A stretch of 64,000 nt of DNA, from positions 62,001-126,000 of IMG/VR virus record IMGVR_UViG_3300037502_003770. The stretch is one strand, 5' to 3'. Below the pieces are notes generated by a model that was not told the origin of the DNA, ran no database searches, and saw only the letters and a program-made list of their open reading frames with translations. Below, piece after piece: positions 19,994-57,423 of the stretch (its first letter is position 1; each line of letters begins with the position of its first letter). The translations under genes were made by a program, and so were the position numbers.

Positions 19994-20068
19994 GAGATAA
20001 TTTTTTAACAAAAAAGAATCTTTCTTGTAATATAAATCAATTCAATGTTCAACTAAACAAAAAAAACA

Positions 20069-34981: not shown

Positions 34982-35044
34982 AAAACCTATTTTCTTTGAG
35001 GATAGGTTTTTCTTTTAACAAAAGTTTACTTTTAAAGTAATATT
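34982..35044 (+). promoter_or_regulatory. Terminator hairpin followed by phage promoter
   Basis: aaaacctat...ataggtttt, then TTAACA-N16-GTAATATT. Confidence 0.65.
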
Positions 35045-36904: not shown

Positions 36905-36946
36905 AAGACTTCTTTTTTAACAGAAAGAAGTCTTTTTTGTATTATA
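36905..36946 (+). promoter_or_regulatory. Hairpin-promoter cassette (copy 1)
   Basis: AAGACTTCTTT-TTAACA-GAAAGAAGTCTT...GTATTATA. Confidence 0.75.
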
Positions 36947-36977
36947 ATTAAACCTTTAAAAAAATCTTTTCTTTAAT

Positions 36978-37373
36978 ATGTCAGCATTTGAAATATTCTC
37001 AATCTTTACATCTATTATAATAACAAGTTGCTTTTTAGTTACTTGGAATATTATTAATTATTGTAAGAATTTTGTTGATAAATATAATAAAGATTACAAT
37101 AATCTTGTAGATGATTATAATTCTTTACTTAAAGAACATAAACAAAATATTGAAGACTATAATTTTCTTTTAAATGATGTAAATGAAAACCATATATTTA
37201 AATATAATATGATGGTTGATAAATATAATGATTTATTACTTGAAACAAAACTTCTTAAAGAAGAACCTAAAGAAGTACATTTAAATTTTTTACTTGAGAA
37301 AGTTTCTTTATTAGGAGAAGAATCTTTAACTGAAAAACAAAAATTATATTTAAAAAAGTTTTCTTTAAAATGA
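36978..37373 (+). CDS. Membrane-anchored coiled-coil protein with DUF6576-like C-terminus
   Basis: N-terminal TM; YN-x-LL heptads; LLEKVSLLGEESLTEKQKLYL. Confidence 0.5.
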   Translation: MSAFEIFSIFTSIIITSCFLVTWNIINYCKNFVDKYNKDYNNLVDDYNSLLKEHKQNIEDYNFLLNDVNENHIFKYNMMVDKYNDLLLETKLLKEEPKEVHLNFLLEKVSLLGEESLTEKQKLYLKKFSLK

Positions 37374-38741
37374 TACAAATTTTTAATAATAATTTTATTT
37401 ACTATGAAAGTAGTAATTTTAAAAAATGTTTAAATTTTTATTTAGGTAATCTTATTTTTATAGATACAGGATTATTATATAATAAAAGTTTTATTTATGA
37501 AGTATATAAACTTTTAGATTTAAAATATATATTAAAAGATTTAAACTATAAACATAAAAGTAGAATTAAGACATTTACTCAATATTGTTATAATTTTAAT
37601 AACGATAATAAACCTTATTTATGAGAATAAAAATATTTAATAATAATCTTTTTTATTTTGAATTAAATTCTAATAATAAAGATTACTACTATTCAAATAT
37701 AAAAATTATTGATATTGGTTTTCTTTTAAATAAAGAATTTTTATTTGAACTTTATCAAGTTATAAGAAGCGATTCTTCTATTCAATTAACAACTTTTAAT
37801 ATTCATTATTTATATGATAAATGTAGATTTTTTATTGATTTTAATTTAGAATATAATTTAAATGATAACCCATACCTTTATTTATGAAAATTTTTATCTT
37901 TAAAGAAAACTTGTTTTATTGTGAGTGTTATACCCCTTTTAGATTTGGTAGTCATATTATATTTTTATATATAAATTCTTATTTTATTGAAACAAATGAT
38001 TTAAATATAGTGTATCATTTTGATAATACTTTTGAATATTCAATACGTTTTAATTTAAAACCTTTTGACAAAACAAATGATAATATAAATCAGTTATTTC
38101 TTATTTTAAAATATGCTTCTAAAAGTAGAAGTGTAATTTTTTCAAAAAAAGAATCTTATTATTACAAAACGAAATGAGAATATTAATCTTTAATAACTAT
38201 ATGTATTATTTTGAATTTTTTCATACGCACAGTACATATTACAAAAATCCATTATATTTATATATAAATTCTTATTTTCTTGAGACAAGTAATATTGATA
38301 TTTATTATTATCTAGTAAAATATTTTGAATATAGTATTGTATTTTTTAGATATAAAAAATCACTTGAAAATATAAAAGATTTATTTTTAAAATTAAAATT
38401 TGAATATAATACTTTTGAATCCATACCTTTCTTTTATAAAAAACGAAATGAAAATATTAATCTTTAATAACAATTTGTTTTATTTAGAAAATGATTTTCA
38501 ATTCTATGAAACATTCTTATTGATAAATTCTAAAATAATTGAAACTAACAAGCTTATAACAATATTTTTATTTGTTAAACGAGATAATAAGAATTTACAA
38601 ACAGTATATAATTTTTGTAATATATCTTTAAATGTATTGTATGAAGTTGCAATGGAATATTACAAAATTAATGTTTTAAATAAACCTTTAACTTCAAGTG
38701 GTATAGCTTATAAACCTTTCTTTTATAAAAAACGAACATGA
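37370..38741 (+). repeat. Five tandem YxE-leader ORFs (37370,37621,37884,38174,38448)
   Basis: MxIxIFNNNxxYxE leaders; ATGA-type overlaps. Confidence 0.75.
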
Positions 38742-39277
38742 ACACTAACAAATACTTAATAGTTGGGTTGGGCAATCCTGAAGATAAACATAGATTCAAT
38801 AGACATAATATTGGATATAGAGTTGCTGATAAGTTTGCAAAACATTATCAAGGAAAAGAATTTAAACATTACAGTAAAAACTCTTTACTTTCAAAAGTAA
38901 ATTTTTCTGATAAGGAAATATATGTTTTAAAACCATTAACTTATATGAACTTATCAGGTCTTGCAGTAAAAGAAATTATTAAAGATTTTGATATTCCTTT
39001 AGAAAATGTTTTAATTATAACAGATGATATTTCTTTAGATTTTGGTAAACTAAGATTAAGAAATAAAGGAAGTGCTGGTGGTCACAATGGTTTAAAAAAC
39101 ATTGAAAAAGAATTACAAACTGATGAGTATTCTCGTCTTAAAATAGGTATTGGTTCAGACTTTAAAAAAGGTGAACTAATTGATTTTGTACTAGGTAATT
39201 TTACAATGGAAGAAGAACTTGGTTTATCTTTAATTCATCTTGAATCTTTTAAAATAATTGAAAACTTTATTAACTAA
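38738..39277 (+). CDS. pth: Peptidyl-tRNA hydrolase
   Basis: LIVGLGNP, RHNIG, KPLTYMNLSG, GSAGGHNGLK, RLKIGIG. Confidence 0.96.
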   Translation: MNTNKYLIVGLGNPEDKHRFNRHNIGYRVADKFAKHYQGKEFKHYSKNSLLSKVNFSDKEIYVLKPLTYMNLSGLAVKEIIKDFDIPLENVLIITDDISLDFGKLRLRNKGSAGGHNGLKNIEKELQTDEYSRLKIGIGSDFKKGELIDFVLGNFTMEEELGLSLIHLESFKIIENFIN

Positions 39278-40004
39278 AAATATGTATATAATCACTTCTT
39301 ATTACTTTTCAATATTATTAGTTCTATTCATAATAGTAACTGTTTTATTTAAACCTTCTTTATTTAAAAGGTTTATTATATTGTACTTTAAATTGTTTGG
39401 TATTGATTATTATGATAATTATTATGATTTTGAAAAATTTTTTATATGGATAGCTTTAGTACTTTTCATATTATTACCTTTTATTGCAATACCATTAATA
39501 TTACTTATTTTATTTATTGGAAGAATAATTAAAATATTAAAAAATTAACTTTCTTTAAGAAAAAATATATTATTAAAAGAAACTAAACTTTAAAAGAAAT
39601 GGAAAACGCTTTAAACGCTATAATTCTTGATAAACTATTAGCGAAAACAGCAAACAATGTTAGTATTAATAATAGTGTTGAAACTTTTCTTTTTAAAAGA
39701 AAGGAGTTTTTAAATAAATATCCATTAGACTGGAAAATATCTAATACAAAAGAAGAAATCGTAATGGTATCTACCTGTCCTTTTAGTAATAAAATTTTTA
39801 AAATTGAAGGTTATCGACATAAACTCGAATACATATTAAAATTATTTTTAAACGGTCAAGAAATACATAAAGATAGTAAATATATTGAATTTAAAAACAC
39901 TCGTGATAAAATAGATTTACTAAATGAATTTAATGAACAATATGAAAAAAGTAAAACTGATATACTTTCTTTAGCCGAATCTTTAAGATAAAAAATAACC
40001 TTTT

Positions 40005-42457
40005 ATGCAAATAGAAATTTTTCTTGATTATGGTTTTTATTTGGAAAAAAATTATTCTTTTCCCAAACTTAAAAAACTTTTAATTAATATAATCAATCTA
40101 AGAGATAATGAAGAAAATTTTAAATCATTAAAAGAACCTGTAGATTATTTTCTTTGTAATAGCAATTTTCAAAGAGTTGAAAGAAATTATGATGGTGAAC
40201 CAATATTTACACATGTCGTTAGATATGAGTATTTACTTAGAAATTATGATTTTCAAAAGACAAAATTTTATATACCATTTGTTTCTAAATTACTTGAAAA
40301 ACAAAGTTATTTAATTGAATATATACCAACTCATTTAATAAGTTTTCCTTTTCAAGAAAAAGCTATTTCAGTAGACCCTTTTTTAATAAGATTAATTAAA
40401 ACTAATAATGAAAACTATTATTCTTTAGTAAAAACCGCTTATTTAAAAGATAAAAATATTATTAGGTTATTACAGATTCCAAAAGAATATAAAGAACAAT
40501 TAAAAAAAGATTTTCCTAATGAAAATTAACTCTTTAAAAAAGAATCTATAATATAAAAAAAAAATAAGTTAATTCTATGATGCCTTTAGAAGAAAGAAAA
40601 GCTGCTTTAGAAAAGTGGAAAGCACATTTAGATACTTTATCTACTGAAGAAGTTGATAATTTAATGAAACCAATTTTTGATAGAGTAGAAGAATTAAAAA
40701 TGCTTGATTTTATTTTTAAAATAGCTACTTTCTTAAATGAAAATAAATTTCTTTGTTTAAAATTTGAAATTATTGATGGTAAAATTGATAATCATTTAAA
40801 TTTTAATGATAGTGAGTATATCGTTCAATATCATGATAATTATTTATTAGGTGACGATAATATTGAAATTCATGATAATATACTTTCAAAAGAAAGGGAA
40901 ATATTATTAAGACAATTTTCTCTTGAATTATTTATGTCTTTTAAAGATGAAATCAAATTATTATCGCAAAATAGTAAACATTGTATTGTCTATGTTACTG
41001 ATGATATTGACTACTTAAATTATTATGTTTATAAATCTGAAACAAAAGAATCTTTTATTGAAAAAGTTGTTTCTTTTTTAAATAAATATGATTTAAAACA
41101 AATTCAGTTTGATTTATTAGTTTATTCACCATATAGAGAATATAAAAATATTTTCTTTACAAGAAATGATGGTTATATTTTTAAAGATGATTTTTCAATG
41201 CCGAAAGAATTAAAAGAAAATGAAGACTTTATTGAATTTTTAGAATACTTTTGTTCAGATATAACTCATGAGTTTATAAATGGTATTTTTAACATGAATT
41301 TACTCGTAACAATTGATAATCAAGGTAATATAAGTGAAAGTGATTTACCAGATAATTATGAGTTAGAACCTTTAAAAAGAGCTTATAAATTTGATAATAA
41401 ATATTTTTTTAATGAGAATAGAAATTCTAACTGATTATTTTGTTTATTTGGAATCACAAAAACCAATATTTAATTTTGGTTTTGGAACAGAAATTTATAT
41501 CGACACTTTTTATTGTAATCAATATACCTACAAATTTAAGTTTAATAAAAATATTGATTATTATAGTATAGCAATGCACTTATTAAAATATAGTGTCTAT
41601 CAAAATAAAAAGTTTTATAATATGTTATGTTTATCATGTATTATGTCTAATAGATTTAATGCTTTATCATATGTACCTAAACCTTTAAGAAGTTATGAAT
41701 TATGTTTAGAATCCATTAAAATGAATCCTTTTACTATTGAATTTGTACCAATTATAACAAAAAATTATTATTCTTTAGTAAAGTACGCTTTTGAAGGGAT
41801 GAAAAAATATGTAGATAATCCGTTATTTAGATTAAAACAATATGGGGTACCAGATGAGTATGTTCATAAAATAAAAATAGATTTTTTATTATGAGAATAG
41901 GTATTTATAACAATGAATTCATTTATTTTGAAAGTTCTCAATATCATATATTTGAATCTTTTCTTTTTAATAGAAATAATAACAATTTATTAAATATTGA
42001 TAGTGAAGCAATTTTATATTACTTTAAAATCTTTAGTGAATATGAAGATTTTTATTTAACAGATTTATATTATTTTTTTACAAAAAAAGTCTTTTCTTTA
42101 AAATTTGATATGTATTTTGAAGATTTTAAAGTTGGATTTTTATTTGATTATGTAAATAAAAATATTTTAAATAAAGAATTATTGTCAGTTTTAATAAATA
42201 ATTACCCAAAACTAGTTTTTAAAATAAAATATAATCAAGTTTATAGTTATTATTCTTTATTGAAAGAAGCTTTTATTAAAGATAATACTATTATAAAACA
42301 TTATAGATTTAAAAATTTACCAAAAAAATATAAAATTCGTTTATATAAAGAATTTAAAAATATTTTAGATAATAAAGAATTTAAAGATTTTTTATATGAT
42401 AGATATTGGTTTAATATAAAGACAACATACAATTTTAAACAAATCATTCTAACATAA
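40005..42457 (+). repeat. YxE-leader DUF4116-like ORFs at 40005, 41412, 41891 (unrelated ORF 40577 between)
   Basis: Leaders plus shared NYYSLVKxA / YYSLLKEA. Confidence 0.6.
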
Positions 42458-43235
42458 AACAACTTTATTCATATATAGATAAAGAACTTGAAAATATAGA
42501 GTTTTTATAAAACCTTAAAAAATAATGAAAACAATTAAAGAATTAGAACAGGAAAGAGAAAAAATGCTAAATGAAAAAAATAGTTTCATTTTTTGTCTCA
42601 CTTTGTAAAAAAATACCAAATACGCAAAGAATCACCTTACAAAGAGATATTCTTAAACCAAATGATAAAAAATGATTGATACTATCACAGAAAAACTCTT
42701 TACTCAATTAAGTAAAGAAGATAAAATAAACTTTATATCAGAAAAAAATAAGTTTATTCAAAATTGTGGTCTTATCGGAAAAAGACATTATTTTGAATAT
42801 ATTAAAAATCTTTATAATAAATATAAAGTATTAATCTAATATGAACAATACACCACTAACTGATGCTTTAAAAAAACATAGGAAAGAAATAGGTGAAGAA
42901 GCTTTTACTAAAGAAATAAATTCTTTCTTTGGAAATAAAGAAACTTCACAAGAACAAATGAAAGTATCTGAACTGATAGATAGTTTTAAGAATCAACCTA
43001 ATGAACACATCTCAACTAATTAAATAAGTTTATGGAAAGTTTAGAAGATTACAGGAGAAGATTAACTCCAGAACAACAATTAAGTTTTGATTTACAAAGA
43101 AGTGCTTTTATGCAAGGTCATAGAGTTTCTGTTGAACGCAAAAAGCAAAAAATGATGAGAAACATGTTAGAGTATATTAATTCTAATCAAGATATCATTT
43201 TACCTTTCGATAAAAACAATAAAAAATAATTTTTT

Positions 43236-43409
43236 ATGAAACAAGAATCCGTTCAAGAAATATTATTATTTCTTTTAGTAATATTTGTTTTTCTTGTGTT
43301 TCTTTTCTGTAAGTTATTTATGGCAACAGAAATACAAAACTGGTCTTGGTGGGGTGTAACTTCTCCATTATGGATTTACTTTCTTATTAAAGGTATAAGC
43401 ATTGACTAA
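43236..43409 (+). CDS. 57-aa membrane protein (WSWWxVxSPLW motif, Tmemb_185A-like phage family)
   Basis: Not in ORF track; FVFLVFLFCKL...NWSWWGVTSPLW. Confidence 0.6.
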   Translation: MKQESVQEILLFLLVIFVFLVFLFCKLFMATEIQNWSWWGVTSPLWIYFLIKGISID

Positions 43410-46219
43410 TGAAAACAATAGAACAGTTATTTCAAGAAAGAATAAATTCTTTTATTGAAAATAAGGTTTTAAGAAGATATGAAATTCAAGCGATAAAAAA
43501 TGAGTATTTTTCTATTTATTTACCTATTTTACCAAAATTCAATATTATTAAAACGTATTTTCTACCCTTTAGAATATCAAATTATAATATTCGTTGCGTA
43601 AGTGAAGAATATCATGAATTTAATATAGATATTCCTTTCAGAAATAAGATTTATAAAATAAAATTACCAAGTTAACAAAAAAAGAAATTATGTCAAACAA
43701 AATAAGACAATATACTTCAGAAGAAGTTCAATATATGATGAACCCTTTTGTTGAATTTATAATAAAAGGTAATTTGTTATATATGATAACTAAACAGTTA
43801 GATTATAGTAGTATTTATATATATGAGGCACGTGACCAAGATATTTTAGATGAAATAAAAGATGATATAACAAATGATATTGACTATTTAGTATCTTATA
43901 TTCCTGATATAGTTGGTACACATTTAAATGAATTAAATTGTGAATTAATCTTTAACAAAGATAGTCTAACTGGAGACCCATTTACTGAATTAAAAAACAA
44001 ATATTCACTTTAAAATATGTCTCTTCCCAAAGAAATAATTCTTTCTAAAATAAAAAGTTCTTTTTTAAAAGCACGTAATAATGGTGCTTTTATATTTTAT
44101 TATACAGCTTTACTTGGTTACAGACTAGAGTTTTATTCTAAAAAAGATATTCAATATTATTTTCTACCTTTTAAAATAACCTTTCATCATTCATTTTATA
44201 ATGATGATAATGAGGTAACAATTTATTTTAAAGGTGTGGAATACACATTTAATGTTATTACAAAAAAATTAACTATATATGAAAAAAAATAATTCTTTTC
44301 TTGAAGAAAAGTTTTTGTTAAGATTTACAAATTATATTAATGAAATTGAAACTGATGGTTTAAATATAATAGAAGAAATAGAATATAATTCTTTTAGATA
44401 TTTTTTACCATTTAAAATACAATCTGAAGTTGTTTGCTTATTTGGTAATTTTTATTTTGATATTACATTTTCAAATAAGACATATAGATACGATTTTCAA
44501 ACAAGAGAAATAGAAGTTTTTGATGAATAAAACTAAAACAATAATTATTTCTAAAAAAATAAGTTATTCTTTCTTTAAAGAAAGACTGAATAAATTGGTG
44601 AATATTGATAAAAAATTTACTTCAGATGATTTTATTTATTATACTAATAAAATTTATGGTATTCAACGTCATCATATCAATATAATAAAATATTATTTAT
44701 TACCGTTTAATATATATATTTCTACTATATCAGAAGAAAATCGATTAATAGTATTTTCTTTTAGAGGTATCAAGTATACATATAATATGGAAACAAATCA
44801 CCTTAAAAAATAAACATATGGTTTATACATTAGATATTTAGATGATGAATAAAACTAAAACAATTATTATTTCTAAAAAAATAACTTATTCTTTCTTTAA
44901 GGAAAGACTGAATAAATTGGTGAATATTGATAAAAAATTTACTTTAGATGATTTAGTTTGGTTAAGTTCAAGAACAGGTGGTCATACTATCCATTCTATT
45001 CCATATCGACATATTAAAATGATAGAATATTATTTATTACCATTTAAAATATATTTATTATATATATCTGAAAATTATTTAATACAATTTTATTTTAGAG
45101 GTGTTAAATATACTTATAATATGAAAACAAATCATCTTAAAAGAAATCCTTATGTTTTATAAAAAATATTCTTTTGAAAAAGAAATCTTACTTAAATTTA
45201 ATAAATTAATTGATGAATTAAAATTTACTGGTGAGATAAATCATGTTTTTGGGTTTGATAATTTTCATTATGTTTATTATTTAAAAGATGAAGTAGTAAA
45301 AAAATTAAGAAAAGAATTATTACCATTTAAAATAAAAATTCCATTAGGTTTTAGATATACAGATTCAATATATTTTCATTTTAGAAAGAAAATATATAAA
45401 TATAATATTAAAGAAAATATTTTTAATACTTTAGATATTTAAATAATGAATAAAACGATAGAACAACTTTTTCAAAAGAAAGTAGATTCTTTTAAAGAAA
45501 AAAATGTTTTAGAAAGTACGGATGATTGGTGTAAAGAAAATCTTATTCATTTAATAATTTTACTTGATATTAAAAAAATTAAAAATTATTTTCTACCTTT
45601 TAAAATTGAAGTACTAGACTTTACAGCATATACTGACCAAGTTATAATTATTTTTAATAATAAAAGATATACTATTAAAATAAATGATGAATAAAATAGA
45701 ACAACTCTTTCAGAATAAAGTAGATTCTTTTAATAAACTTTCATTTTCTGAAAGAAGTAGTTACTTTAATAAATATTCTTTTTTTGGTGGTTATAAACGT
45801 GATTATATTATAGCTGTTAATACAGTAAATAAATTACAAAGATATTTCTTACCTTTTAAAGTAAATATAATTACAAAATATAGGTCAAGATGTAACATTA
45901 TATTATATTTTAATAATAAAGAATATAAATTAAAAACACCTAAATAATGAATAAAACAATAGAACAGTTATTTGAAGAAAGATTTTATTATTTTATTGAA
46001 AATAAAATACTCACAAATCAAGATATAAATATTTGTTTACCAGATAAAGAATATTACTTTTGTTTACCTTGCATATCTAAAATTCATATAATTGAAGAAT
46101 ATTTCATACCTTTCAGAACAACATATTTAATTAACTGTTTAGATAGAGAAAAGCATCTTTTTCGGTTAATGATTTATTTTAGAGGTACGCTTTATAGTGG
46201 AAATCTTCTTTCAGAATAA
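43409..46219 (+). repeat. Nine tandem 'YFLPF' paralogs (43409,44017,44279,44520,44842,45152,45446,45684,45947)
   Basis: Conserved (Y)(F/L)(L/I)PF(K/R/N)x and F-x-x-x-x-Y; several begin M(N)KTIEQLF. Confidence 0.8.
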
Positions 46220-46230
46220 ACATATCTTTT

Positions 46231-46294
46231 TTAACAGAAAGAATTCTTTTTTGTAATATAAATCAAACTAAACAAAAAAATTAAATTCCTTATG
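46231..46294 (+). promoter_or_regulatory. Promoter/leader direct repeat, near-identical to 46652-46715
   Basis: ttaacagaaagaa(t/g)tctttttt(t)gtaatataaatcaaactaaacaaaaaaa...ttccttATG brackets ORF 46292-46627. Confidence 0.8.
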
Positions 46295-46636
46295 TTATTG
46301 ATAACAGTTTTGCTTTTATTTGTAATAAGTTTCATTATCACTAAAAAGTTTAAATATAAAAAGGAATCATTAATATTTACAGTACTAACTGAGAATGAAG
46401 AATTATCACTAATTAATAATATTGTAAATAATTTAACACCTGAAGAATGTAGAAATGAAGATGTATTTCATTATACTGTTCGTGGAAAACTTTTTAAGAG
46501 TAGAGGTGGTGCGATAAAATACTTTCAAAGTAGTTGTATCACATCTGATAAACTGTCAAGTATATTAAAAAATTTATACGAATCACCAAAAATTCAACAA
46601 AGAGCTAAATACTCTTTATATAAATAAATACATTTT

Positions 46637-46682
46637 AAAAAGACTTCTTTTTTAACAGAAAGAAGTCTTTTTTTGTAATATA
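46637..46682 (+). promoter_or_regulatory. Hairpin-promoter cassette
   Basis: AAAAAGACTTCTTT-TTAACA-GAAAGAAGTCTTTTT-GTAATATA. Confidence 0.8.
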
Positions 46683-46712
46683 AATCAAACTAAACAAAAA
46701 AATAAATTCCTT

Positions 46713-47459
46713 ATGAAAGAAAATCCATTCCTTTTAACATTTTCATCAGATAAATTAAATTCTGATTTTAAGACAATCTTATTTAAAAGTTATAAACTTT
46801 TGAGTGTTTGTTTTATCTTTTTAGGTTTAACAATCTTTGGTTTAAATACTTTAGTACCAGAGTTAGTGCTTAGTATGTCAAATAATCTATTTGTTATTTT
46901 AGGTTTATTCATACTTCAATTACTACTTATTAAATTTATATCTTACAAACGTAATGATATTGGTGGTGAAGGTATTCTAATAAAAAACCATATTAGTAAT
47001 AAATATAAACTTTTATCATTAGGTTTATTTTGTTTAATAGATGCTTTCTTATTTGCACCTATTATATTAAAAACTTCTGCTGCTGTTTTAATTAGCACAC
47101 TAGTTTATACAATATTAACTGTAGTTATTGTAAATGTTTACGCTATATTTACAAAAAAAGATACTAGAAATTGGGTATATTTTATACTACCAGTACTATT
47201 ATTGATAATTGTTTCTATGCTTATTAATATTTTCTTTATAGAATCAACTATTTTTGGTATTTTAATTAATGTAGGTATTATCATTGTAATGAGTTTATCT
47301 TCAGTAAATACTATTAATATGATAAAACATGATTTGGAAGATGGTTATCTCTCAGTTGAAAAACCTAATGGTTATCATATTGATGTTACATTATCATTGT
47401 TTCTTGAAATTATTAATATATTTTTGAGTTATTTAAGTATAAATGAATCAAAAAAATAA
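46713..47459 (+). CDS. Bax inhibitor-1/YccA family membrane protein
   Basis: About 7 TM segments, 'YAIFTKKD', C-terminal 'LSLFLEIINIFLSYL'. Confidence 0.75.
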   Translation: MKENPFLLTFSSDKLNSDFKTILFKSYKLLSVCFIFLGLTIFGLNTLVPELVLSMSNNLFVILGLFILQLLLIKFISYKRNDIGGEGILIKNHISNKYKLLSLGLFCLIDAFLFAPIILKTSAAVLISTLVYTILTVVIVNVYAIFTKKDTRNWVYFILPVLLLIIVSMLINIFFIESTIFGILINVGIIIVMSLSSVNTINMIKHDLEDGYLSVEKPNGYHIDVTLSLFLEIINIFLSYLSINESKK

Positions 47460-47476
47460 TAAAATCATTTCCTTTC

Positions 47477-47521
47477 AAAAAGACTTCTTTTTTAACAGAA
47501 AGAAGTCTTTTTTGTAATATA
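47477..47521 (+). promoter_or_regulatory. Hairpin-promoter cassette
   Basis: Same repeat as 46637. Confidence 0.8.
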
Positions 47522-47549
47522 GATAATTCTAAATAAACAAAAACACTTT

Positions 47550-48161
47550 ATGAAAAAACTCTTATCATTAATATTATTTTCTATACTAAGTATTTCTTTT
47601 TATTCTTGCGATGACAAAGAAGATATTAAACCTCTTGTAGAAGATAAATTATTAAAAGTTTCTAATATTATTACTCTAAAACGTACCGCACCAGTTGGTC
47701 AATTTTTCAGTACTTTGAATTTTGGTGTGTATGATTATGAAACAACAAAAAAATATAACTGGGATTATGGTTTAATTTCTAATATTATTGATTTTGGCTA
47801 TTTTTATAGTTCATCATCATACCACTGTTTAGCTTCACCATCATCCTCTATATATTATAATTATATTAAAAATAAGCGAGAAACGATTTTTAAATATACA
47901 ATACAATCAACCGATAATTTATCATATTTTAATAATATAAATAAAAATAGTCAGCTTGATAGTAGTTTTATTAATCCACCTATAATTCTTAATGGTTTTA
48001 TTGATTATTCAGGTGAAGTTATTAGAAATTTAAAAAGTGGGCAAATAATTTTATTGGAAACTTCTAATAATAAAAAATCTATAATATATATTGATTCTGT
48101 TAATCATACTAACAATAGCGATAATACTTTTATTAAATTTAAAATAAAAACACAAGAATAG
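47550..48161 (+). CDS. Bacteroidota-type lipoprotein
   Basis: Lipobox FYSC followed by acidic DDKED; signal peptide similar to 50003. Confidence 0.7.
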   Translation: MKKLLSLILFSILSISFYSCDDKEDIKPLVEDKLLKVSNIITLKRTAPVGQFFSTLNFGVYDYETTKKYNWDYGLISNIIDFGYFYSSSSYHCLASPSSSIYYNYIKNKRETIFKYTIQSTDNLSYFNNINKNSQLDSSFINPPIILNGFIDYSGEVIRNLKSGQIILLETSNNKKSIIYIDSVNHTNNSDNTFIKFKIKTQE

Positions 48162-48305
48162 TTTTAAAACCGAACTTGTATATATAATAAATAAAGATTA
48201 TGAAAAATAAAAGTCCTCCTTTCTAAAGAAAGATAATAAATTATAAGAATAGGTTTTCTTATAATAAAAAATAATTTAATATAAATAAACAAAAAATAAA
48301 TTTAA

Positions 48306-48584
48306 ATGGAATATCATATTAAAAGAAAAAATAAAAATAATACAAAAACAAGTGCATTAACTGATATGTACGAAGTTTATTTAATGGAGAATATTTACCC
48401 TGAAAAGATACTATATCAATCAACAAAAGAAATTATTGAAAATTTGAAATCAGGTCATAAATATTATGTACCTAAAAATAAATTAGATAGAATTGAAGTA
48501 ATTCATGCTAATGGTGAACATATCAAAACTAAAGCCGACACAGAAACAATAAATAATTTATACAATTTAGAAAATTATAATTAA
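48306..48584 (+). CDS. DUF3892-like protein
   Basis: IIENLKSGHKYYV...IKTKADTETINNLYNL. Confidence 0.6.
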   Translation: MEYHIKRKNKNNTKTSALTDMYEVYLMENIYPEKILYQSTKEIIENLKSGHKYYVPKNKLDRIEVIHANGEHIKTKADTETINNLYNLENYN

Positions 48585-48585
48585 A

Positions 48586-48867
48586 ATGAATCAATATAAA
48601 ATAACACATCGAGATAAAAATAATCCAAACACAAACCCTTTAGATGATAAATATAAAGTAGAATATAAAAATCCCTTTAAAAATCCAACAATTATTACAA
48701 CAAAACAAATTATTGAAAATATTGAAAAAGGTGATGAATATTATATTGTTATTGATAATAACAAAACAATTGTAAAAGTTGTAAAGAAAACAACAGGTGA
48801 AAAATATATTACTACAATGTCTGATGACACTATAGATAATAACTTATTAAATTTACCTCCATATTAA
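48586..48867 (+). CDS. DUF3892-like protein
   Basis: IIENIEKGDEYYI...YITTMSDDTIDNNLLNLP. Confidence 0.65.
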   Translation: MNQYKITHRDKNNPNTNPLDDKYKVEYKNPFKNPTIITTKQIIENIEKGDEYYIVIDNNKTIVKVVKKTTGEKYITTMSDDTIDNNLLNLPPY

Positions 48868-49195
48868 AATGCAAAAATTAGTTGATACAAAAAAACTTGT
48901 TAATGTAAGAATTTTAAGTAAATCTAATTTAAATGATGGTTTTTATTTTGGTACTGCTCATCATATTACAGATGGAACTATTGGTGATATTATTATAACT
49001 TATGAGGAAATAGTTTATTTAGTGAGAAATTCTTATCCGATTTATATAAATTCCACAAATGAACGTTTAAAATATCAAAATTTTAACTTGTATTCATATG
49101 ATATTACAACATCAAGTCAAACAAATAGTTTTGAAAATTTAAGGTACGCATCTTATTATGAGGAATTATATATTAATGAATTTTTAAAATAATTA

Positions 49196-49549
49196 ATGAA
49201 TATGAAAACAGAAGTTAATGAATGGAAAGATGGTAGGTTTGCTATTTTTGATTCCGAAACAAAAAAGATTCTTGATGATGCACAAGGTTATGGTTATAAA
49301 ACCAAACAAAATGCTTTAAAAGCTATGTGGTATAAATTTAAAGGTGGTAAAGAAAAGAAAGATGAAGAAAAGGAATTATTTAATAAATGGATAAAAGAAA
49401 ATAAAAAAGTTTATAATACAATAAATGATTATTTTGAATCAGCTTTTAAAGAAATAGCAAGAGGTGAAACAACTATTAAAGAAATTTATCAAGAAATAGA
49501 AGAAGAATTTAATATTAAAATACCTGATTATGTAATTAAAAATATGTAA
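49196..49549 (+). CDS. Conserved hypothetical protein (LDDAQGYGYK motif)
   Basis: Distinctive motif; function unknown. Confidence 0.55.
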   Translation: MNMKTEVNEWKDGRFAIFDSETKKILDDAQGYGYKTKQNALKAMWYKFKGGKEKKDEEKELFNKWIKENKKVYNTINDYFESAFKEIARGETTIKEIYQEIEEEFNIKIPDYVIKNM

Positions 49550-49555
49550 CCTTTT

Positions 49556-49951
49556 ATGAATAAAATAACTATTTTTAATGAAAATTTTATTTATTTAGAA
49601 ATGATTATTTCTAATATGGAATATTTAAATATAACAAATTTATATATAAATAAATACACTTTAAAATCAATGGATAAAGAAGATGAAAATGTTGTCTCAT
49701 TTATAGCATCTATTTTATTAGATAGATTAAATTTATTTAAAGATTGGTATTTTTATTTCTATAAAATAACAGTAGAAAGTGAATTTAGATATATAAGTTT
49801 TGTATATAATACAATAATGAATCAACAAGAATATTATGATATTATATATAAGATATATTTAAAAGATAAATCTATTATTGAAAAATATAGAGAAATTTTA
49901 ACACCTAAAGTTGTCAGAAATCTTTTAGAAAATAATAAAATTATTTCTTAA
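49556..49951 (+). CDS. YxE-leader protein
   Basis: MNKITIFNENFIYLE. Confidence 0.6.
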   Translation: MNKITIFNENFIYLEMIISNMEYLNITNLYINKYTLKSMDKEDENVVSFIASILLDRLNLFKDWYFYFYKITVESEFRYISFVYNTIMNQQEYYDIIYKIYLKDKSIIEKYREILTPKVVRNLLENNKIIS

Positions 49952-50002
49952 CTAAAAAGATATATTTCTGTAATATAAATCAAACTAAACAAAAACGGCA
50001 AT

Positions 50003-50320
50003 ATGAAAAAAATCTTATTCTTAATATTATTTTCTATAATAAGTGTTTCTTTTTACTCATGTGGTAAACAAAGGAAAAGTAACACAAAAAATTATACTTT
50101 AATTTATGAAGCACCTTGTTTACCTGAGTATATTATTTTTTATGATGAAACATTAAAAGAAACGGTAACATATTCTTCACATAAAGCAAAAAATGATAAT
50201 ATAACTGAATTTACTTGTCAGTATGTTAAAATTTCATTAAAACAAAAATATTCTGAAATAATAATCAAAGATACTATTGGTTATCAAAAAATGTTTTACA
50301 CTCGTGATTTACAATATTAA
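50003..50320 (+). CDS. Lipoprotein
   Basis: Lipobox FYSC; own promoter at 49948-49977. Confidence 0.65.
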   Translation: MKKILFLILFSIISVSFYSCGKQRKSNTKNYTLIYEAPCLPEYIIFYDETLKETVTYSSHKAKNDNITEFTCQYVKISLKQKYSEIIIKDTIGYQKMFYTRDLQY

Positions 50321-50321
50321 T

Positions 50322-50421
50322 AATATGTAAGCGTAGTAAAGCTCCGTTAATGATAGGTTAAACTAAGGGTTTGGCTCTATGTGCGAGAAACCCTGAAAGA
50401 CCCGAAAAACGCTTACATATT
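50322..50421 (+). ncRNA. Candidate structured RNA, family unassigned
   Basis: Perfect 13-bp terminal stem AATATGTAAGCGT/ACGCTTACATATT, inner AGGGTTT/AAACCCT stem, GC well above background. Confidence 0.55.
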
Positions 50422-50470
50422 TTTATTTTAAATAAAATTCTTTACTTAAAAAAACTTTAAGAATATTATC

Positions 50471-51466
50471 ATGAAACTAACAAAAAAAGTAGAAGAAAAA
50501 ATAATAGCGGTTTATACTGAAAAAAATGGTTTCACCAAAGTAATGAAGGATGGAAAAATGAATCTTCTAAATAAAGAAGGTGTATTAATTTCAGATACTT
50601 GGTATGATAATATTTTTTATAATGGACTAAATAATTTTTTGATTGTAGAAGTTGAAGACAAATATAATTTTTTAAATGATGATTTTAAATTAATTTCAGA
50701 TACTTGGTATGATAATATTTCAGGTTTTAATAATAATTATTGTTTTGTTTATTCTGATACGATAGATAAACAAAATCTTATTAATAAAGAAGGTAAAATT
50801 TTATTAGATACTTGGTGTGATTATATTGAAAATCTTAGTTACCTTAACGATAAAGATTTCTTTATAAAAGTACATATTGATGGTAAAACTAATATCTTTA
50901 ATGAAAATTTAAATTTACTGTCAAATGTTTGGTATGATTCAATATATATTGTAAATGATTATAACATTAGAAAAAGTAGAAAAAATACAACACATACTAT
51001 ATTAGTAGAGCGTGATAAAAAATATAATTTTATTAATAGAGATGGTAAATTATTATCTGACACTTGGTTTGATAATGCTTTCAATTTTACATTTGAGTTT
51101 GCTAGTGTAACTCTTAATGATAAAGTTAATTTTATTAATAGAGATGGTAAATTATTATCTGACACTTGGTTTGATAATGCTTCTAATTTTCACTATAATA
51201 ATTATACTTTATCTGAAGTTGTATTAAATAATAAAGTTAATTTTATTAATAGAGACGGTAAACTAGTATCTGACACTTGGTTTGATTATGTTAACCTTCA
51301 TCCTGATAGTGAGTATGGTATTGTAAGAATTAATGATAAATTTGGTTTAATAAATAAAAAATGTTTATTGGAAACAGAAGTAATCTATGATGAAATAAAA
51401 CGAATTAGTATGTCTGATAAGTTTGAATTTCATTTAAATGGTGAAGTTTATGTTCAAGAAGAATAA
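50471..51466 (+). CDS. WG/KWG-like repeat protein
   Basis: Repeated K(Y/V)NFINRDGKLLSDTWFD units, some near-identical at DNA level. Confidence 0.75.
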   Translation: MKLTKKVEEKIIAVYTEKNGFTKVMKDGKMNLLNKEGVLISDTWYDNIFYNGLNNFLIVEVEDKYNFLNDDFKLISDTWYDNISGFNNNYCFVYSDTIDKQNLINKEGKILLDTWCDYIENLSYLNDKDFFIKVHIDGKTNIFNENLNLLSNVWYDSIYIVNDYNIRKSRKNTTHTILVERDKKYNFINRDGKLLSDTWFDNAFNFTFEFASVTLNDKVNFINRDGKLLSDTWFDNASNFHYNNYTLSEVVLNNKVNFINRDGKLVSDTWFDYVNLHPDSEYGIVRINDKFGLINKKCLLETEVIYDEIKRISMSDKFEFHLNGEVYVQEE

Positions 51467-51472
51467 AAATTC

Positions 51473-51518
51473 AAAAAGACTTCTTTTTTAACAGAAAGAG
51501 GTCTTTTTCTGTAATATA
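51473..51518 (+). promoter_or_regulatory. Hairpin-promoter cassette
   Basis: AAAAAGACTTCTTT-TTAACA-GAAAGAGGTCTTTTT. Confidence 0.75.
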
Positions 51519-51548
51519 GATAATTTTAACCTTTAAATAAATCAGTAA

Positions 51549-52163
51549 ATGACAAAATATAATGAAGTAAAGAAGTTTTTCAATAATGAAATATTTTCTC
51601 AATTACCTTCTCATCATTTTACAAGTATTGTGGGTAGAACCACTAAATTTGCTAAAGTTATAGCAAACCTTAACCCTACTTTGGTTATACCTGGAGAACA
51701 TATTGATAAATTAAAAACTTTTATTTCATATATAGTATGGTTAGACTCTTCACCAACTAAATATGACCGATTTGGTGGTATTCTTACTGTGGAATATTTA
51801 GAAGAAATAATGAGAGTTATTGTTTATGAAATAATATTTTGTAAACAAATGAAACTTGACAATTCTTTTAGGAAACCTGAAAATAATACTTACTATAGAT
51901 TTGAGATTGATAGTAATGAATCTTTAAATACAGAAGATTATATATCTATCTTAGATAGTTTACCTGATTTGGAAGCTATAAAATCTGAAGAAAATGAAAA
52001 TGTAATATTTGAAAAAATATTTTTACTATCACAAGAATTATATAACCCTCAGCATCCAATAAGAAGATTTTTATATTCTAAATTTTCTTTATATGAGATA
52101 CAAACAGTTATATCTGATATCATACTAACTAATGATTATGAGAAAATTCAATATAAATTATAA
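51549..52163 (+). CDS. Protein resembling the C-terminal region of type IIG R-M/methyltransferase enzymes
   Basis: EEIMRVIVYEIIF ... ELYNPQHPIR; recalled similarity only. Confidence 0.35.
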   Translation: MTKYNEVKKFFNNEIFSQLPSHHFTSIVGRTTKFAKVIANLNPTLVIPGEHIDKLKTFISYIVWLDSSPTKYDRFGGILTVEYLEEIMRVIVYEIIFCKQMKLDNSFRKPENNTYYRFEIDSNESLNTEDYISILDSLPDLEAIKSEENENVIFEKIFLLSQELYNPQHPIRRFLYSKFSLYEIQTVISDIILTNDYEKIQYKL

Positions 52164-53065
52164 TAATTATGACTTTAGATAACTGTTTACCTGATGGCTA
52201 CGTTCCAATTTCAAATGTATCTTTTTCTGAAAGAATGAAGATTATTAATAATATATTTATCCCAACAGAAGAAATTTATATTAGAAAAGAAACTTCTTGG
52301 GAAAGAATAACTTTTTATAAACAAGTTGTCTTTGAATATGAAATAGCTATTTCAGGTAGAGATTTTTTTGAAGTAAACAAACTTAAATAATTATCACCTT
52401 TAAAACATTTATTATGCAAAAAGTTAAACTAACATTATTTGACAATGAATTTAGATTTGGTGAACCTACTAAATTTTATGAAGTCAAAAAAGAATATTAT
52501 TTCCTATCAAATAGGAGTTCTACTGAGATAAAAGAAATTTTTGCAAAATCAAATGAATTAACAGGACTTGATTTTGAAAAACTCTTTTTAAGAAGAAATG
52601 AATATAATAGACGATATACTTTAAATAAAGATGAAATTTCAATTCTTGAAGAAAACGGTATTGATTTTTCAAAAGTTCTTAGTACTTTTTTTTATTCTCA
52701 CATGATATTTTTAGATTTAAGTCGTGATGGTGAAGGTGGTTATGTTTTTAAAGAATATGATTCAATAAAATTATTTGTTGAATATGTAAAATTATCAGAC
52801 CCCGAAATAATTTTAGAACTAGTTGATGGGTATGATAAATTATTTAAAGACAGTAATAATCAGAAAATATGGGATGAATATTCAAAATTATCCGATTCTG
52901 AAACAATAATTAGATTGATTGAACCATACTCAAATGAGTATGAAAATATTGATGTTTCTTTTATATTATGGTTAGCTAGTATTTATAATTATTCATAATT
53001 AGTACTAAATTAAAGATAAACAATATTTTATAAACAAAATTAAATAAAAATTCTTTTCTTTCAAT

Positions 53066-53107
53066 AATACTTCTTTTTTAACAGAAAGAAGTATTTTTTG
53101 TAATATA
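53066..53107 (+). promoter_or_regulatory. Hairpin-promoter cassette (AATAC/GTATT variant)
   Basis: Compensatory arm change relative to AAGAC/GTCTT copies. Confidence 0.8.
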
Positions 53108-53558
53108 GATAATCTTAAACTTTAAATCATTTATGAAAAACATACTTCTTAAAATAAGTATATTCTTAATGAATATAAATTTCTTGAAAGGAAAAATATC
53201 TTTTTCATTAAAAAGTGATATACTAAAGAAATATTTTGCACCTTATGTTTCTCGTTCTTTTGAAAAACAATCTTTTAACCCTATAATTATTTTTAAAGAA
53301 TATGATAACGCAATCATTGAATATGGTAAAATATTTAATGATGATTATAGTTCTCCTGATTTATGGTCTAGGTATAAAGGTTATCAAAAAGGTAGATATA
53401 ATTATAATAAATCCGAATATAAAGGAAATTTTATACAAAATATTTGTTTAAGAATTATTATTTTTAATGTGAAAATACCTATTTTAAGGAAAAGATTTGT
53501 ATATAAAAGTTAAACAGTTTAATAGTACTGAAATACGTCTGATAAAATTATTAATCTC

Positions 53559-53601
53559 AAAAATACTTCTTTTAACAGAAAGAAGTATATTTTGTAATAT
53601 A
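53559..53601 (+). promoter_or_regulatory. Hairpin-promoter cassette
   Basis: ATACTTCTTT-TAACA-GAAAGAAGTAT...GTAATATA. Confidence 0.75.
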
Positions 53602-53944
53602 GATAATCTTAACCTTTATCAAAATGAATAGAAAAACAGAACTTCATGAAGAATTAAAATCTTTATTTGAAAATAAACTTAAAGAAGATAGGGATTTTAA
53701 ACTATCTTTTGACGAACAAGAAGTACCATTCACATTAGAAGTAAAATATACGGGTAGTAATGAAGTAACACAATTTAAAACATATATAAAATCATTTAGT
53801 TGGTATGGATTTTTAATGTGTGATTTTTATACTTTACCTGAAGATGAAAATTTTAAAGATGGTTTTTGTCAGATAATTGTTGATTACACAGAAGAACAAT
53901 TAGAATATTTTATAAGCAAACTTAAATAAAATTCTTTTCCTTTC

Positions 53945-53989
53945 AAAAATACTTCTTTTTTAACAGAAAGAAGTATTTTTTGTAATATA
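53945..53989 (+). promoter_or_regulatory. Hairpin-promoter cassette
   Basis: AAAAATACTTCTTT-TTAACA-GAAAGAAGTATTTTT-GTAATATA. Confidence 0.8.
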
Positions 53990-56136: not shown

Positions 56137-56267
56137 TATTTAGTTTGTTTCCCCTTTTGAAAAAAAAATTAGAATTTTAAAACCTATTCTTTTTAAGAAT
56201 AGGTTTTTTCTTTAACAAAATATATGTTTTTTTGTAATATAAATCAAACCTTAAAAAAAGAATCGTT

Positions 56268-57330: not shown

Positions 57331-57423
57331 GTTTAAAACCTATTCTTTTTAAGAGTAGGTTTTTTCTTTAACAAAATATATGTTTTTTTGTAATATAAAT
57401 CAAACCTTAAAAAAAGAATCGTT

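What the first reader, a model, noticed from the sequence alone, without database searches (positions are those of the whole stretch)
36905..53989. Covarying hairpin-promoter cassettes with the upstream promoter box in the loop
Seen: seven copies (36905, 46637, 47477, 51473, 53066, 53559, 53945) of AA(G/T)ACTTCTTT-TTAACA-GAAAGAAGT(C/A)TT-Tn-GTA(A/T)TATA. The G/C to T/A change is compensatory, so pairing is selected. A different hairpin at 6184 has the same geometry. Near-identical repeats at 46231 and 46652 bracket a single gene. Established: stem-loop promoter repeats (PeSLs) mediate module shuffling in T4-type phages. Inference: fused terminator+promoter units that make one-gene cassettes exchangeable by recombination; cruciform-dependent promoter control is also possible.
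Basis: partly seen in the sequence, partly recalled or inferred. Interest (0 to 1): 0.65.

Follow-up and report, generated by a model that had tools for sequence, protein, structure and literature searches.

The report
Phage terminator-promoter cassettes (PeSL type)
In the early-gene region of an uncultured 313-kb T4-related giant phage, about thirty repeated promoters are fused to transcription-terminator hairpins, often with the upstream promoter box at the hairpin tip; these units lie at junctions where related phages differ in gene content, as described for the PeSL cassettes of T4-type phages.

Summary
All seven copies sit at the stated coordinates (0.01 expected by chance). The G:C to T:A change keeps the pair, and the hairpin at 6184 has the same layout.

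The copies are a subset of about 30 promoters, TTAACA-17 nt-TA(A/T)TAT with TG in front. All lie on the + strand, 22-35 nt before start codons, in the small-gene region of a 312,694-bp, 22% GC phage. That phage has T4-type capsid, portal and sheath genes.

About 11 promoters have the -35 box at the tip of a 10-16 bp hairpin followed by a T-run. At least three of those stems are unrelated in sequence. About 8 others have a separate covarying terminator hairpin just upstream.

Wobble pairs and fold energies favour the + strand RNA. This points to intrinsic terminators rather than a cruciform or a protein operator.

Two partly assembled relatives (83-97% identical) differ in gene content here. 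Several junctions lie at cassette edges: the hairpin foot, the -10/leader, and the start codon.

This matches PeSL cassettes, whose published subclasses include a stem-loop overlapping the -35 box. It is a new member of a known kind. Termination, promoter use and recombination are inferred, not measured. The sigma factor and the host are unresolved.

The parts
6182..6227 (+). Class L cassette with an unrelated stem. The 16-bp hairpin (6182-6218) has 3 G.U pairs and TTAACG in its loop. A T-run follows, then TGTAATATA at 6219-6227. The next ATG is at 6250.
   Evidence: -14.6 kcal/mol as + strand RNA against -5.8 for the opposite strand
24091..24124 (+). Terminator-only variant of the family hairpin. 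The loop reads TTAAAA and no -10 box follows. It lies 20 nt after the stop of gene 23262-24071. It carries the second compensatory pair.
26264..26293 (+). Family promoter that keeps only the 3' arm of the 24093-type hairpin (half cassette). It lies 11 nt from the end of a TnpB-like mobile ORF.
34982..35044 (+). Class U cassette: a covarying terminator hairpin (34982-35010) plus T-run, then the -35 box at 35015 and the -10 box.
36905..36946 (+). Class L cassette HP36917. The hairpin is 36905-34, the -35 box 36917-22, and TGTATTATA 36938-46. The next ATG is at 36978.
   Evidence: It is 100% conserved in relatives L100 and L101. Relative L102 diverges exactly at its 5' foot.
46231..46260 (+). Family promoter with a degraded 5' arm. 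From the -35 box to the ATG it is nearly identical to the 46652 copy. With that copy it brackets gene 46292-46627.
46637..46682 (+). Class L cassette HP46652: a 16-bp hairpin (46637-72), the -35 box at 46652-57, and the -10 box at 46674-82. The next gene, 46713-47459, encodes a Bax1-I family protein.
47477..47521 (+). Class L cassette HP47492. It shares its 5' flank with the 53066 and 53945 copies.
49948..49977 (+). Family promoter without a hairpin (TTAACT). It is conserved in relatives L095, L096 and L097.
51473..51518 (+). Class L cassette HP51488, with an A-to-G change that gives a G.U wobble. Together with the upstream gene 50471-51466, it is absent from relative L095.
53066..53107 (+). 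Class L cassette HP53078 (T:A stem variant). It is absent from relative L096, whose homology resumes at the ATG at 53133.
53558..53601 (+). Class L cassette HP53572 (T:A variant, 5' arm two T shorter).
53945..53989 (+). Class L cassette HP53960 (T:A variant).
   Evidence: In run X2 a 46-nt contig over it has depth 133, against 33 for single-copy flanks.
56179..56241 (+). Class U cassette: terminator hairpin 56179-56207, T-run, -35 box at 56212, -10 box. It is part of a tandem duplication with the 57335 unit.
57335..57397 (+). Class U cassette, paralogous to the 56179 unit.
20005..20034 (+). Family promoter with only a weak, imperfect hairpin. Further members of this kind are at 23186, 55913 and 60634.

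Best explanation
These are composite terminator-promoter cassettes of the PeSL kind, in the early, hyperplastic region of a distant T4-type jumbo phage.

Each cassette carries a strong two-box promoter: TTAACA, a 17-nt spacer ending in TG, then TA(A/T)TAT. It fires 22-35 nt before the next start codon.

The tip of that hairpin is the -35 box, and the U-run behind it is the promoter spacer. Upstream transcripts should therefore end inside the promoter, so each gene or short gene group is expressed from its own promoter only. A second class reaches the same result with a separate hairpin whose T-run abuts the -35 box.

The cassettes are 55-120 nt direct repeats in front of unrelated genes. They probably also serve as patches of homology where the phage's recombination system deletes, duplicates or swaps the genes between them.

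Shown here: the sequence anatomy, the covariation, the strand bias, the position relative to genes, and the gene-content differences and junction positions in relatives.

Inferred: promoter activity, termination, which sigma factor reads the promoters, and that recombination at the cassettes caused the indels.
For: Family and position:
- About 30 members share one consensus. All are on the + strand at genome 82-140 kb, intergenic, 22-35 nt before an ATG.

Hairpin not due to chance:
- 9 of 23 close family promoters reach -10 kcal/mol or better, against 0.03 in flank shuffles.
- Three unrelated strong stems share the geometry: the main family, window 6182, and L004:8060-8090. Two weaker ones are at L004:5598 and L004:13477.

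Pairing is selected:
- The family has two compensatory pairs.
- The upstream-hairpin class has 4 compensatory pairs, with no broken pair in 5 copies.

The level of action is RNA:
- 14 G.U pairs occur in the + sense against 1 in the opposite sense.
- The + strand fold is the more stable in 10 of 12 class L hairpins and 6 of 7 class U hairpins.

The hairpin works without the promoter:
- The copy at 24091-24124 keeps stem and T-run after a stop codon but has no -10 box.

Conservation:
- HP36917 is identical over 41 nt in L100, which is 91% identical overall.

Exchange:
- Genes behind the cassettes are not paralogues.
- Flank, stem variant and leader type occur in mixed combinations.
- L095 lacks gene 50471-51466 plus HP51488, with a mosaic crossover in the -10/leader.
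- L102 diverges at the 5' foot of HP36917 and ends in another cassette's 5' arm.
- L096 replaces 50324-53131 and resumes at the ATG behind HP53078.
- L095 begins in a cassette leader and jumps from 52396 to 54450.

T4-type phage with recombination genes:
- gp23, gp20 and gp18 homologues, a RecA/UvsX-like gene and an SbcC/gp46-like gene.

Published PeSLs:
- They include stem-loops overlapping the -35 box, act as terminators and promoters, and recombine in or next to the loop (PMC2839356; PMC4122927).
Against: - No RNA data exist for this phage, so no transcription start or 3' end has been seen.
- The stems are AT-rich (3 G:C pairs), so termination could be partial.
- The seven main copies are repeats, so they count as one or two independent cases. 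Each compensatory change may be a single event.
- The promoter consensus itself (T-run, AACA, A-run) supplies 5-6 of the pairs.
- Several indel junctions in the relatives lie at start codons or inside genes rather than in cassettes (49551, 49617, 52396/54450). Only 5-6 events could be mapped, from short contigs.
- The genome has no Shine-Dalgarno sites and holds four promoters of the Bacteroidota type. The host may therefore be one whose main sigma factor does not read TTGACA/TATAAT-like boxes.
- No sigma factor with a -35-reading region was found in the phage.
Confidence: 0.72

Rival explanations
1. The inverted repeat is the DNA operator of a dimeric regulator (phage or host) that sits over the -35 box and switches this subset of promoters on or off.
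For: The arms are 11-12 bp, with centres about two helical turns apart, centred on the -35 box. Seven promoters share the same arms.
Against: Three unrelated stems occupy the same position. The changes are compensatory rather than conserving a recognition sequence. G.U wobbles occur only in the + sense. The 24093 copy keeps the stem without a promoter. An uninterrupted T-run always follows the stem.
Confidence: 0.06
2. The repeat extrudes as a DNA cruciform under negative supercoiling. This places the -35 box in a single-stranded loop, making the promoter supercoil-sensitive or creating a recombination hot spot.
For: Most family copies are perfect 13-16 bp AT-rich inverted repeats with a 4-nt loop, a form that can extrude. 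The PeSL authors mapped crossovers to the loop.
Against: The wobble positions in the 6182, 51473 and class U hairpins become A.C mismatches on the other strand. For 6182 this cuts the opposite-strand fold to -5.8 from -14.6 kcal/mol. Strict + orientation and placement after stop codons are not needed for a cruciform. Nothing here tests DNA structure.
Confidence: 0.05
3. The hairpin copies are a selfish palindromic repeat (REP or MITE-like) spread by a transposase, and they land next to promoters only by target preference.
For: Near-identical copies stand in front of unrelated genes. The genome carries TnpB-type mobile ORFs, one of which is inserted at a promoter edge in a relative.
Against: No Y1 (TnpA/RAYT) transposase is present. 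All 9 copies lie in one orientation and one register with the promoter boxes, and only at genome 86-132 kb. Similarity fades gradually and in mosaic fashion rather than ending at fixed termini with target duplications.
Confidence: 0.05
4. The hairpin has no function of its own. It is a by-product of the T-run/A-run flanks of the -35 box, and one chance palindromic promoter was multiplied by duplication.
For: The consensus supplies 5-6 pairs. Seven copies are clearly related by copying.
Against: There are independent stems of unrelated sequence, compensatory changes, 100% conservation in a 91%-identical relative, and a parallel covarying upstream-hairpin class.
Confidence: 0.08

Closest known systems
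PeSLs (promoter-early stem-loops) of coliphages RB49 and phi1 (Arbiol et al. 2010, PMC2839356)
   Same: Both are repeated intergenic units that combine a sigma-70-like early promoter with a stem-loop terminator. Both lie in regions of small orphan genes in a T4-type phage, flank single genes, and are associated with indels between close relatives. One of the five published subclasses has the stem-loop overlapping the -35 box.
   Different: - The stems here are AT-rich (GACTTC/GAAGTC) rather than polyG/polyC.
- The commonest published positions are between the boxes or over the -10 box. Here the two used positions are -35 at the loop tip and immediately upstream.
- The phage is a 313-kb, 22% GC uncultured relative with only about 30-40% identity in core proteins.
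- Promoter and terminator activity and mini-circles were shown experimentally for RB49/phi1, not here.
PeSLs and PmSLs of T4/PST and KVP40/nt-1 (Comeau et al. 2014, PMC4122927)
   Same: The promoter consensus is close (TTTACW-N17-TAYWAT in T4/PST). The stem-loop lies just upstream of the promoter, as in the class U cassettes here. 'Half' or degraded cassettes occur next to indels, like 46231, 26264 and the L095 junction.
   Different: Those stem-loops are upstream of the promoter, not wrapped around the -35 box. No MotA-box (middle-mode) version was seen here.
Stem-loop and early-promoter repeats of the T4 internal-protein loci (Repoila et al. 1994, as discussed in PMC2839356)
   Same: Both are AT-rich stem-loops joined to early promoters, bounding shuffled small genes.
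   Different: Known to me only through the discussion. No sequence comparison was made.
REP/BIME palindromic repeats and their RAYT transposases (from general knowledge)
   Same: Both are short, repeated, extragenic palindromes at gene ends that can act as terminators or RNA stabilisers.
   Different: REPs occur in both orientations and depend on a Y1 transposase. Here there is one orientation, a fixed register with promoter boxes, and no Y1 gene.

Membership tests
PeSL (promoter-early stem-loop) cassettes of T4-type phages | Sigma-70-like promoter with -35 and -10 boxes at about 17 nt spacing, just upstream of a gene | tested here: met
   TTAACA, 17 nt (the last two being TG), then TA(A/T)TAT, 22-35 nt before an ATG, in about 30 places. 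Activity was not measured.
PeSL (promoter-early stem-loop) cassettes of T4-type phages | Stable stem-loop within or next to the promoter | tested here: met
   About 11 promoters have the -35 box inside a hairpin (-6 to -16 kcal/mol). About 8 have a hairpin 0-9 nt upstream (-11 to -16 kcal/mol). Both classes covary.
PeSL (promoter-early stem-loop) cassettes of T4-type phages | The stem-loop terminates or attenuates upstream transcription | not testable with these tools
   No RNA run holds this phage. The T-run, the position after stop codons and the + strand bias are indirect support.
PeSL (promoter-early stem-loop) cassettes of T4-type phages | Many near-identical copies, clustered in hyperplastic regions of small orphan genes | tested here: met
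   All copies lie at genome 82-140 kb among genes averaging 120-250 aa, most without a family match.
PeSL (promoter-early stem-loop) cassettes of T4-type phages | Indels and replacements between close relatives lie at or next to the cassettes | tested here: inconclusive
   Three junctions lie at cassette edges: 36905 (+/-3), about 51513-51529, and 53132. Two contig ends lie inside cassettes. Three to four other junctions are elsewhere. The contigs are short.
PeSL (promoter-early stem-loop) cassettes of T4-type phages | Recombination between neighbouring cassettes gives deletions or mini-circles | not testable with these tools
   Only contigs were available. The one back-joint seen in X1 is explained by a repeat.
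PeSL (promoter-early stem-loop) cassettes of T4-type phages | Host genome is a T4-type myovirus | tested here: met
   Gp23 capsid family E 2e-59. T4 portal family E 3e-66. gp18-like sheath. The relation is distant.
REP/RAYT-type mobile palindromes | Y1 (TnpA/RAYT) transposase in the genome and copies in both orientations | tested here: not met
   No PF01797 match. All copies are on the + strand.

The most novel reading that the evidence does not exclude
The strict placement of the -35 box at the hairpin tip, with the terminator's U-run serving as the promoter spacer, may be more than compaction. RNA polymerase that terminates there would be released on top of a promoter and could be re-used at once. 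This would be a hand-over from termination to initiation, tying each gene's firing to transcription of the gene before it. A related open possibility: these sigma-70-like promoters are read by a non-standard factor in a host that lacks Shine-Dalgarno sites and whose own promoters are of the Bacteroidota type.
Probability: 0.08. Interest if true: 0.75.

Novelty: new member of a known kind. Interest (0 to 1): 0.4.

Why it matters
PeSL cassettes have so far been described in only three pairs of cultured T4-type phages. Finding the same design in a very distant, uncultured 313-kb relative from groundwater and aquatic samples suggests it is a general way for large phages to do two things. First, it insulates many small accessory genes transcriptionally. 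Second, it keeps them easy to gain, lose and swap. A family-level relative (G001) has its own repeated promoter cassettes of another promoter type, some preceded by terminator-like hairpins.

For annotation, the cassettes give ready-made transcription-unit boundaries in a genome where most genes have no known function.

The compact version, with about 45 nt holding both a terminator and a promoter, is also a natural part that could be tested as an insulator in synthetic constructs.

Tried and rejected
- Near-identical DNA in the phage collection: none.
- Exact hairpin and promoter patterns in IMG/VR: none.
- Promoter pattern in JGI metagenome contigs: two chance hits in unrelated 31-37% GC contigs without a hairpin.
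- Family-level relatives found through the sheath protein (about 40% identity): they do not share the promoter consensus, so they cannot be used for cassette-by-cassette comparison.
- The generic promoter/terminator scan does not discriminate in this AT-rich DNA: 240 hits against 201 in shuffles.
- Exact-protein look-ups with proteins of L095 and L096 gave no further contigs.
The one back-joint in the source run comes from a contig starting in the HP47492 repeat.
- Host identification via the Bax1-I and ribonucleotide reductase genes in genome contigs failed: no hits, or only chance archaeal hits.
- A single-sequence fold of the 438-aa mobile ORF was unusable (pLDDT 31). It has no relative by sequence in the PDB.
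- Rfam finds nothing for the structured element at 50326-50420.
- A typed coordinate error made one search fail; it was not repeated.
- No alternative genetic code was used or needed. ORFs under table 11 cover 93% of the genome.


Full report
**1. What the window is**

The window is bases 62,001-126,000 of a single 312,694-bp virus contig with 22% GC, estimated 96% complete. It encodes:
- a T4-type major capsid protein (Gp23 family, E 2e-59);
- a T4-type portal protein that contains an intein;
- a gp18-like tail sheath;
- a RecA/UvsX-like protein;
- an SbcC/gp46-like protein.

No cultured phage is close. The nearest sheath proteins, in IMG/VR, are about 40% identical. It is therefore a distant T4-type jumbo myovirus. 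The best holder, and possible source, is a subsurface metagenome run.

From genome 60 kb to 160 kb almost every gene is on the + strand, and most are small.

**2. The observation**

With the A-run that also pairs included, the hairpins start at 36905, 46637, 47477, 51473, 53066, 53558 and 53945.
- The stems are 11-16 bp, the loop is 4 nt, and the fold energy is -10.6 to -16 kcal/mol.
- Four copies have G:C at the third stem position, and the three neighbouring copies at 53-54 kb have T:A.
- The 51473 copy has one further change, which gives a G.U wobble.

The hairpin at 6182-6218 has an unrelated stem, with TTAACG in the loop and the same -10 box behind a T-run.

The repeats at 46231 and 46652 are nearly identical from the -35 box to the ATG, and they bracket one 111-aa gene. 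The 46231 copy has a different 5' arm and cannot fold.

**3. The copies belong to a larger family**

Repeat finding and a pattern scan of the whole genome show about 30 sites with the same layout: T-run, TTAACA, 15-16 nt, TGTA(A/T)TATA. Read as a promoter, this is TTAACA, a 17-nt spacer ending in TG, then TA(A/T)TAT.

Every close match (at most 1 mismatch) in the 60-141 kb region, 23 in all, is on the + strand and intergenic, with the ATG 22-35 nt downstream in most. Looser matches on the minus strand or inside genes look like chance.

I sorted 32 intergenic members by structure:
- **Class L, about 11.** The -35 box is enclosed by a hairpin.
- **Class U, about 8.** A separate hairpin ends 0-9 nt upstream, with its T-run running into the -35 box.
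- **No strong hairpin, about 13.**

Besides the main family, class L has three further members beyond the window's end:
- an unrelated strong stem (AAAATCCCTTT/AAAGGGATTTT, -15 kcal/mol) at L004:8060-8090;
- a weaker unrelated stem at L004:13477;
- a diverged family copy at L004:5598.

Class U includes a family of its own, AACCTAYTYYY/RRRRRTAGGTT. Across five copies it has four compensatory pairs and no broken pair.

**4. Is the pairing selected, and at what level?**

- *Against chance.* Nine of 23 close family promoters have a hairpin of -10 kcal/mol or better around the -35 box. Shuffling the upstream flank gives 0.03, and 1.3% of random windows from the same region reach that energy. Counting the repeated family once still leaves three independent strong stems among about 17 independent promoters.
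- *Covariation.* The family shows two compensatory pairs: G:C to U:A, and U:A to A:U in the 24093 copy. In that alignment two rows are shifted by indels, so some pairs listed as broken are alignment artefacts.
- *Independence from the promoter.* The 24093 copy is telling. It sits 20 nt after a stop codon and keeps stem and T-run. Its loop reads TTAAAA and no -10 box follows, so the hairpin is maintained where there is no promoter.
- *Strand.* G.U wobble pairs occur 14 times in the + sense and once in the opposite sense. The + strand fold is the more stable in 10 of 12 class L hairpins and 6 of 7 class U hairpins. For the 6182 hairpin the values are -14.6 against -5.8 kcal/mol.

A DNA cruciform or a symmetric protein site would not show this strand bias. 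An RNA hairpin in transcripts coming from the upstream gene would. Hairpin copies also have uninterrupted T-runs more often than the others; I read this by eye, and the copies are not independent.

Taken together, the hairpins are best read as intrinsic terminators.

**5. Mechanism**

- *Shown.* The anatomy places a terminator-like hairpin so that its tip is the -35 box and its U-run is the promoter spacer.
- *Inferred.* Upstream transcripts end inside the promoter. The promoter then starts a fresh transcript that does not contain the hairpin. Each gene or short group is thereby insulated. The units between successive promoters hold 1, 1, 7, 2, 3, 1 and 1 genes from 46231 to 53960.
- *A plausible origin.* The promoter consensus already supplies a T-run and an A-run around AACA, giving 5-6 pairs. 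Adding a few specific bases outside these makes a stable stem.

**6. Exchange of genes**

Within the genome:
- The genes behind the seven cassettes are unrelated to each other.
- The cassettes are mosaics. The 5' flank type TTTCCTTTCAAAAA occurs with both stem variants, and so do the other flanks. The AATCAAAC leader occurs with and without the hairpin.
- These combinations need recombination or gene conversion between copies.

Two relatives could be recovered in pieces through 90%-identity protein clusters.

*Relative A* comes from an aquatic metagenome of another study (loci L095 and L102).
- It shares 49551-50454 and 51526-52396 with the window at 83-90% identity.
- It lacks 50455-51525, which is the WG-repeat gene plus HP51488. 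The crossover is a mosaic inside the -10/leader.
- After 52396 it continues directly into the homologue of the gene at 54464. This skips four genes and three cassettes, but rests on only 37 nt.
- Upstream of 49551 it has a methyltransferase-to-helicase block in place of the window's small genes. The contig begins in a cassette leader.
- L102 matches the window up to the T-run just before HP36917 and diverges within 3 nt of the hairpin's 5' foot. It then carries two genes absent from this genome and ends in the flank and 5' arm of another cassette.
- In the same run, a 46-nt contig over the hairpin has about four times the depth of the single-copy contig, so the repeat is multi-copy there too.

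*Relative B* comes from JGI and ENA samples (loci L096, L097, L100 and L101).
- It keeps HP36917 unchanged over 41 nt, although L100 is only 91% identical overall.
- It replaces 50324-53131 with an unrelated 80-aa gene and resumes at the ATG behind HP53078.

Gene content between the repeats therefore varies, and three mapped junctions plus two contig ends lie at cassette edges. Other junctions lie at start codons or inside genes. With so few events and such short contigs, the enrichment cannot be tested properly.

**7. Comparison with what is known**

PeSLs were defined in RB49/phi1 as strong sigma-70-like early promoters joined to stem-loops that act as terminators.
- They have five subclasses by stem-loop position, including overlap with the -35 box.
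- They cluster in hyperplastic regions, flank orphan genes, and recombine in or beside the loop to give deletions and mini-circles (PMC2839356).
- T4/PST and KVP40/nt-1 have their own versions with the stem-loop just upstream of the promoter, as well as half cassettes at indels (PMC4122927).

The elements here meet every sequence-level criterion. The functional criteria (termination, promoter activity, circles) could not be tested. I file them as a new member of a known kind. Three things are particular to this case: the AT-rich stems, the consistent -35-at-the-tip geometry reached by at least three unrelated stems, and the distance of the phage from all earlier examples.

**8. Caveat on who reads the promoters**

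- The genome has no Shine-Dalgarno sites: GGAG occurs before 0 of 446 starts.
- It holds four copies of a different promoter-like unit, TTTG-N20-TAnnTTTG, at L005:2166, 3808, 7485 and 9855. From my own knowledge, this is the Bacteroidota consensus.
- The 287-kb relative G001 has about 47 such sites on one strand, against about 6 in shuffles, concentrated in its own small-gene region. Some are preceded by terminator-like hairpins.
- The phage encodes only a weak match to sigma region 2, which I take as possibly gp55-like, and no region 4.
- Host identification failed.

The label 'sigma-70-like' therefore describes the sequence. The factor that uses it is unknown.

**9. Verdict**

The mechanism is well supported at sequence level and untested experimentally. 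Interest is moderate.

Noticed in passing
window 7698-9105, 14249-15614 and 24884-26252 (all minus strand); 727-1953 (minus strand); L100:957-2396; L101:772-2211: A 1.4-kb mobile unit encodes a 435-441 aa protein of a large, mostly viral family that JGI names 'IS605 OrfB family transposase' (PF27229 on many members). The window has three copies, 86-92% identical, plus one canonical TnpB (OrfB_IS605 with the Cas12f-like TNB domain). In relative B a fourth copy is inserted just after ATTTTTA, at the -35 edge of promoter P36045; that site is empty in the window (36020-36050). Two window copies end 11-13 nt from family promoters. The 3' untranslated end is conserved, as for a guide-RNA scaffold.
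   Followed up: partly
window 50326-50420: A GC-richer, roughly 100-nt element lies between genes 50003-50320 and 50471-51466. A 13-bp closing stem is followed by a U-run. Fold energy is -26.6 kcal/mol (z -2.4). It is single-copy, conserved in relative A (L095) and absent from relative B (L096). No Rfam family matches. It may be a small RNA or a large terminator.
   Followed up: partly
whole genome; leaders such as window 53108-53132: Shine-Dalgarno sites are absent: GGAG occurs before 0 of 446 start codons. Leaders are instead enriched 3.5-5.5-fold in TTAAAC, TAAACT and AACCTT. This suggests a host that does not use Shine-Dalgarno pairing.
   Followed up: partly
L005:2166, 3808, 7485, 9855 (genome 148166, 149808, 153485, 155855); G001 142-166 kb (L117-L118): A second repeated promoter-like family has the form TTTGG-N20-TA..(C/T)TTTG, which is the Bacteroidota consensus as far as I know. 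This phage has four copies in front of larger genes. The 30% GC relative G001 has about 47 on one strand, usually preceded by one or two TTTAACA boxes.
   Followed up: partly
L007:9610-12015 (minus strand): The T4-type portal protein (gp20 family) is interrupted by an intein splicing domain at residues 367-596.
   Followed up: no
window 10190-10613, 27118, 37353-38495, 49545, 59292-60222: Many small genes begin with the same roughly 50-nt stretch, which encodes an N-terminus of the form M..I.IFN.N.FYLE. This is a multi-copy family of small proteins scattered through the early region (families D12 and D15-D18).
   Followed up: no
window 56169-57454: A tandem duplication covers a whole unit: upstream terminator hairpin, promoter, and a gene of about 320 aa (56268-57251 and 57424-58368). 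The regulatory part is 93% identical and the coding part 72%.
   Followed up: no
window 50550-51301: The gene that is present here but absent from relative A encodes six internal repeats of about 35 aa, of the WG beta-repeat kind.
   Followed up: no
window 2153-3840 and 40005-42457, and about 16 further genes elsewhere in the genome: BLASTP links a 22-member paralogue group that includes the 1659-aa protein at L006:1237-6216. Its function is unknown.
   Followed up: no
L012:18301-18374 (= L013:3301-3374); window 15672-15746: Near the right end of the genome there is a tRNA cluster (Asn, Met, Glu, Asp), plus one tRNA-like gene with an odd anticodon loop that ARAGORN could not assign. A further tRNA-Met lies in the window, beside a TnpB-like element.
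   Followed up: no
window 36820-36904: Just upstream of HP36917 there is a long-range hairpin (AAATCCCCTTTC...GGAAAGGGGATTT plus a T-run). In this genome and in relative B, its loop has received a 38-nt insert flanked by a 12-nt direct repeat and carrying its own small hairpin. Relative A has the uninterrupted form.
   Followed up: partly
window 62440-63080: This is a GC-richer stretch with no ORF of 60 aa or more and no Rfam match at the gathering score. It was not examined further.
   Followed up: no
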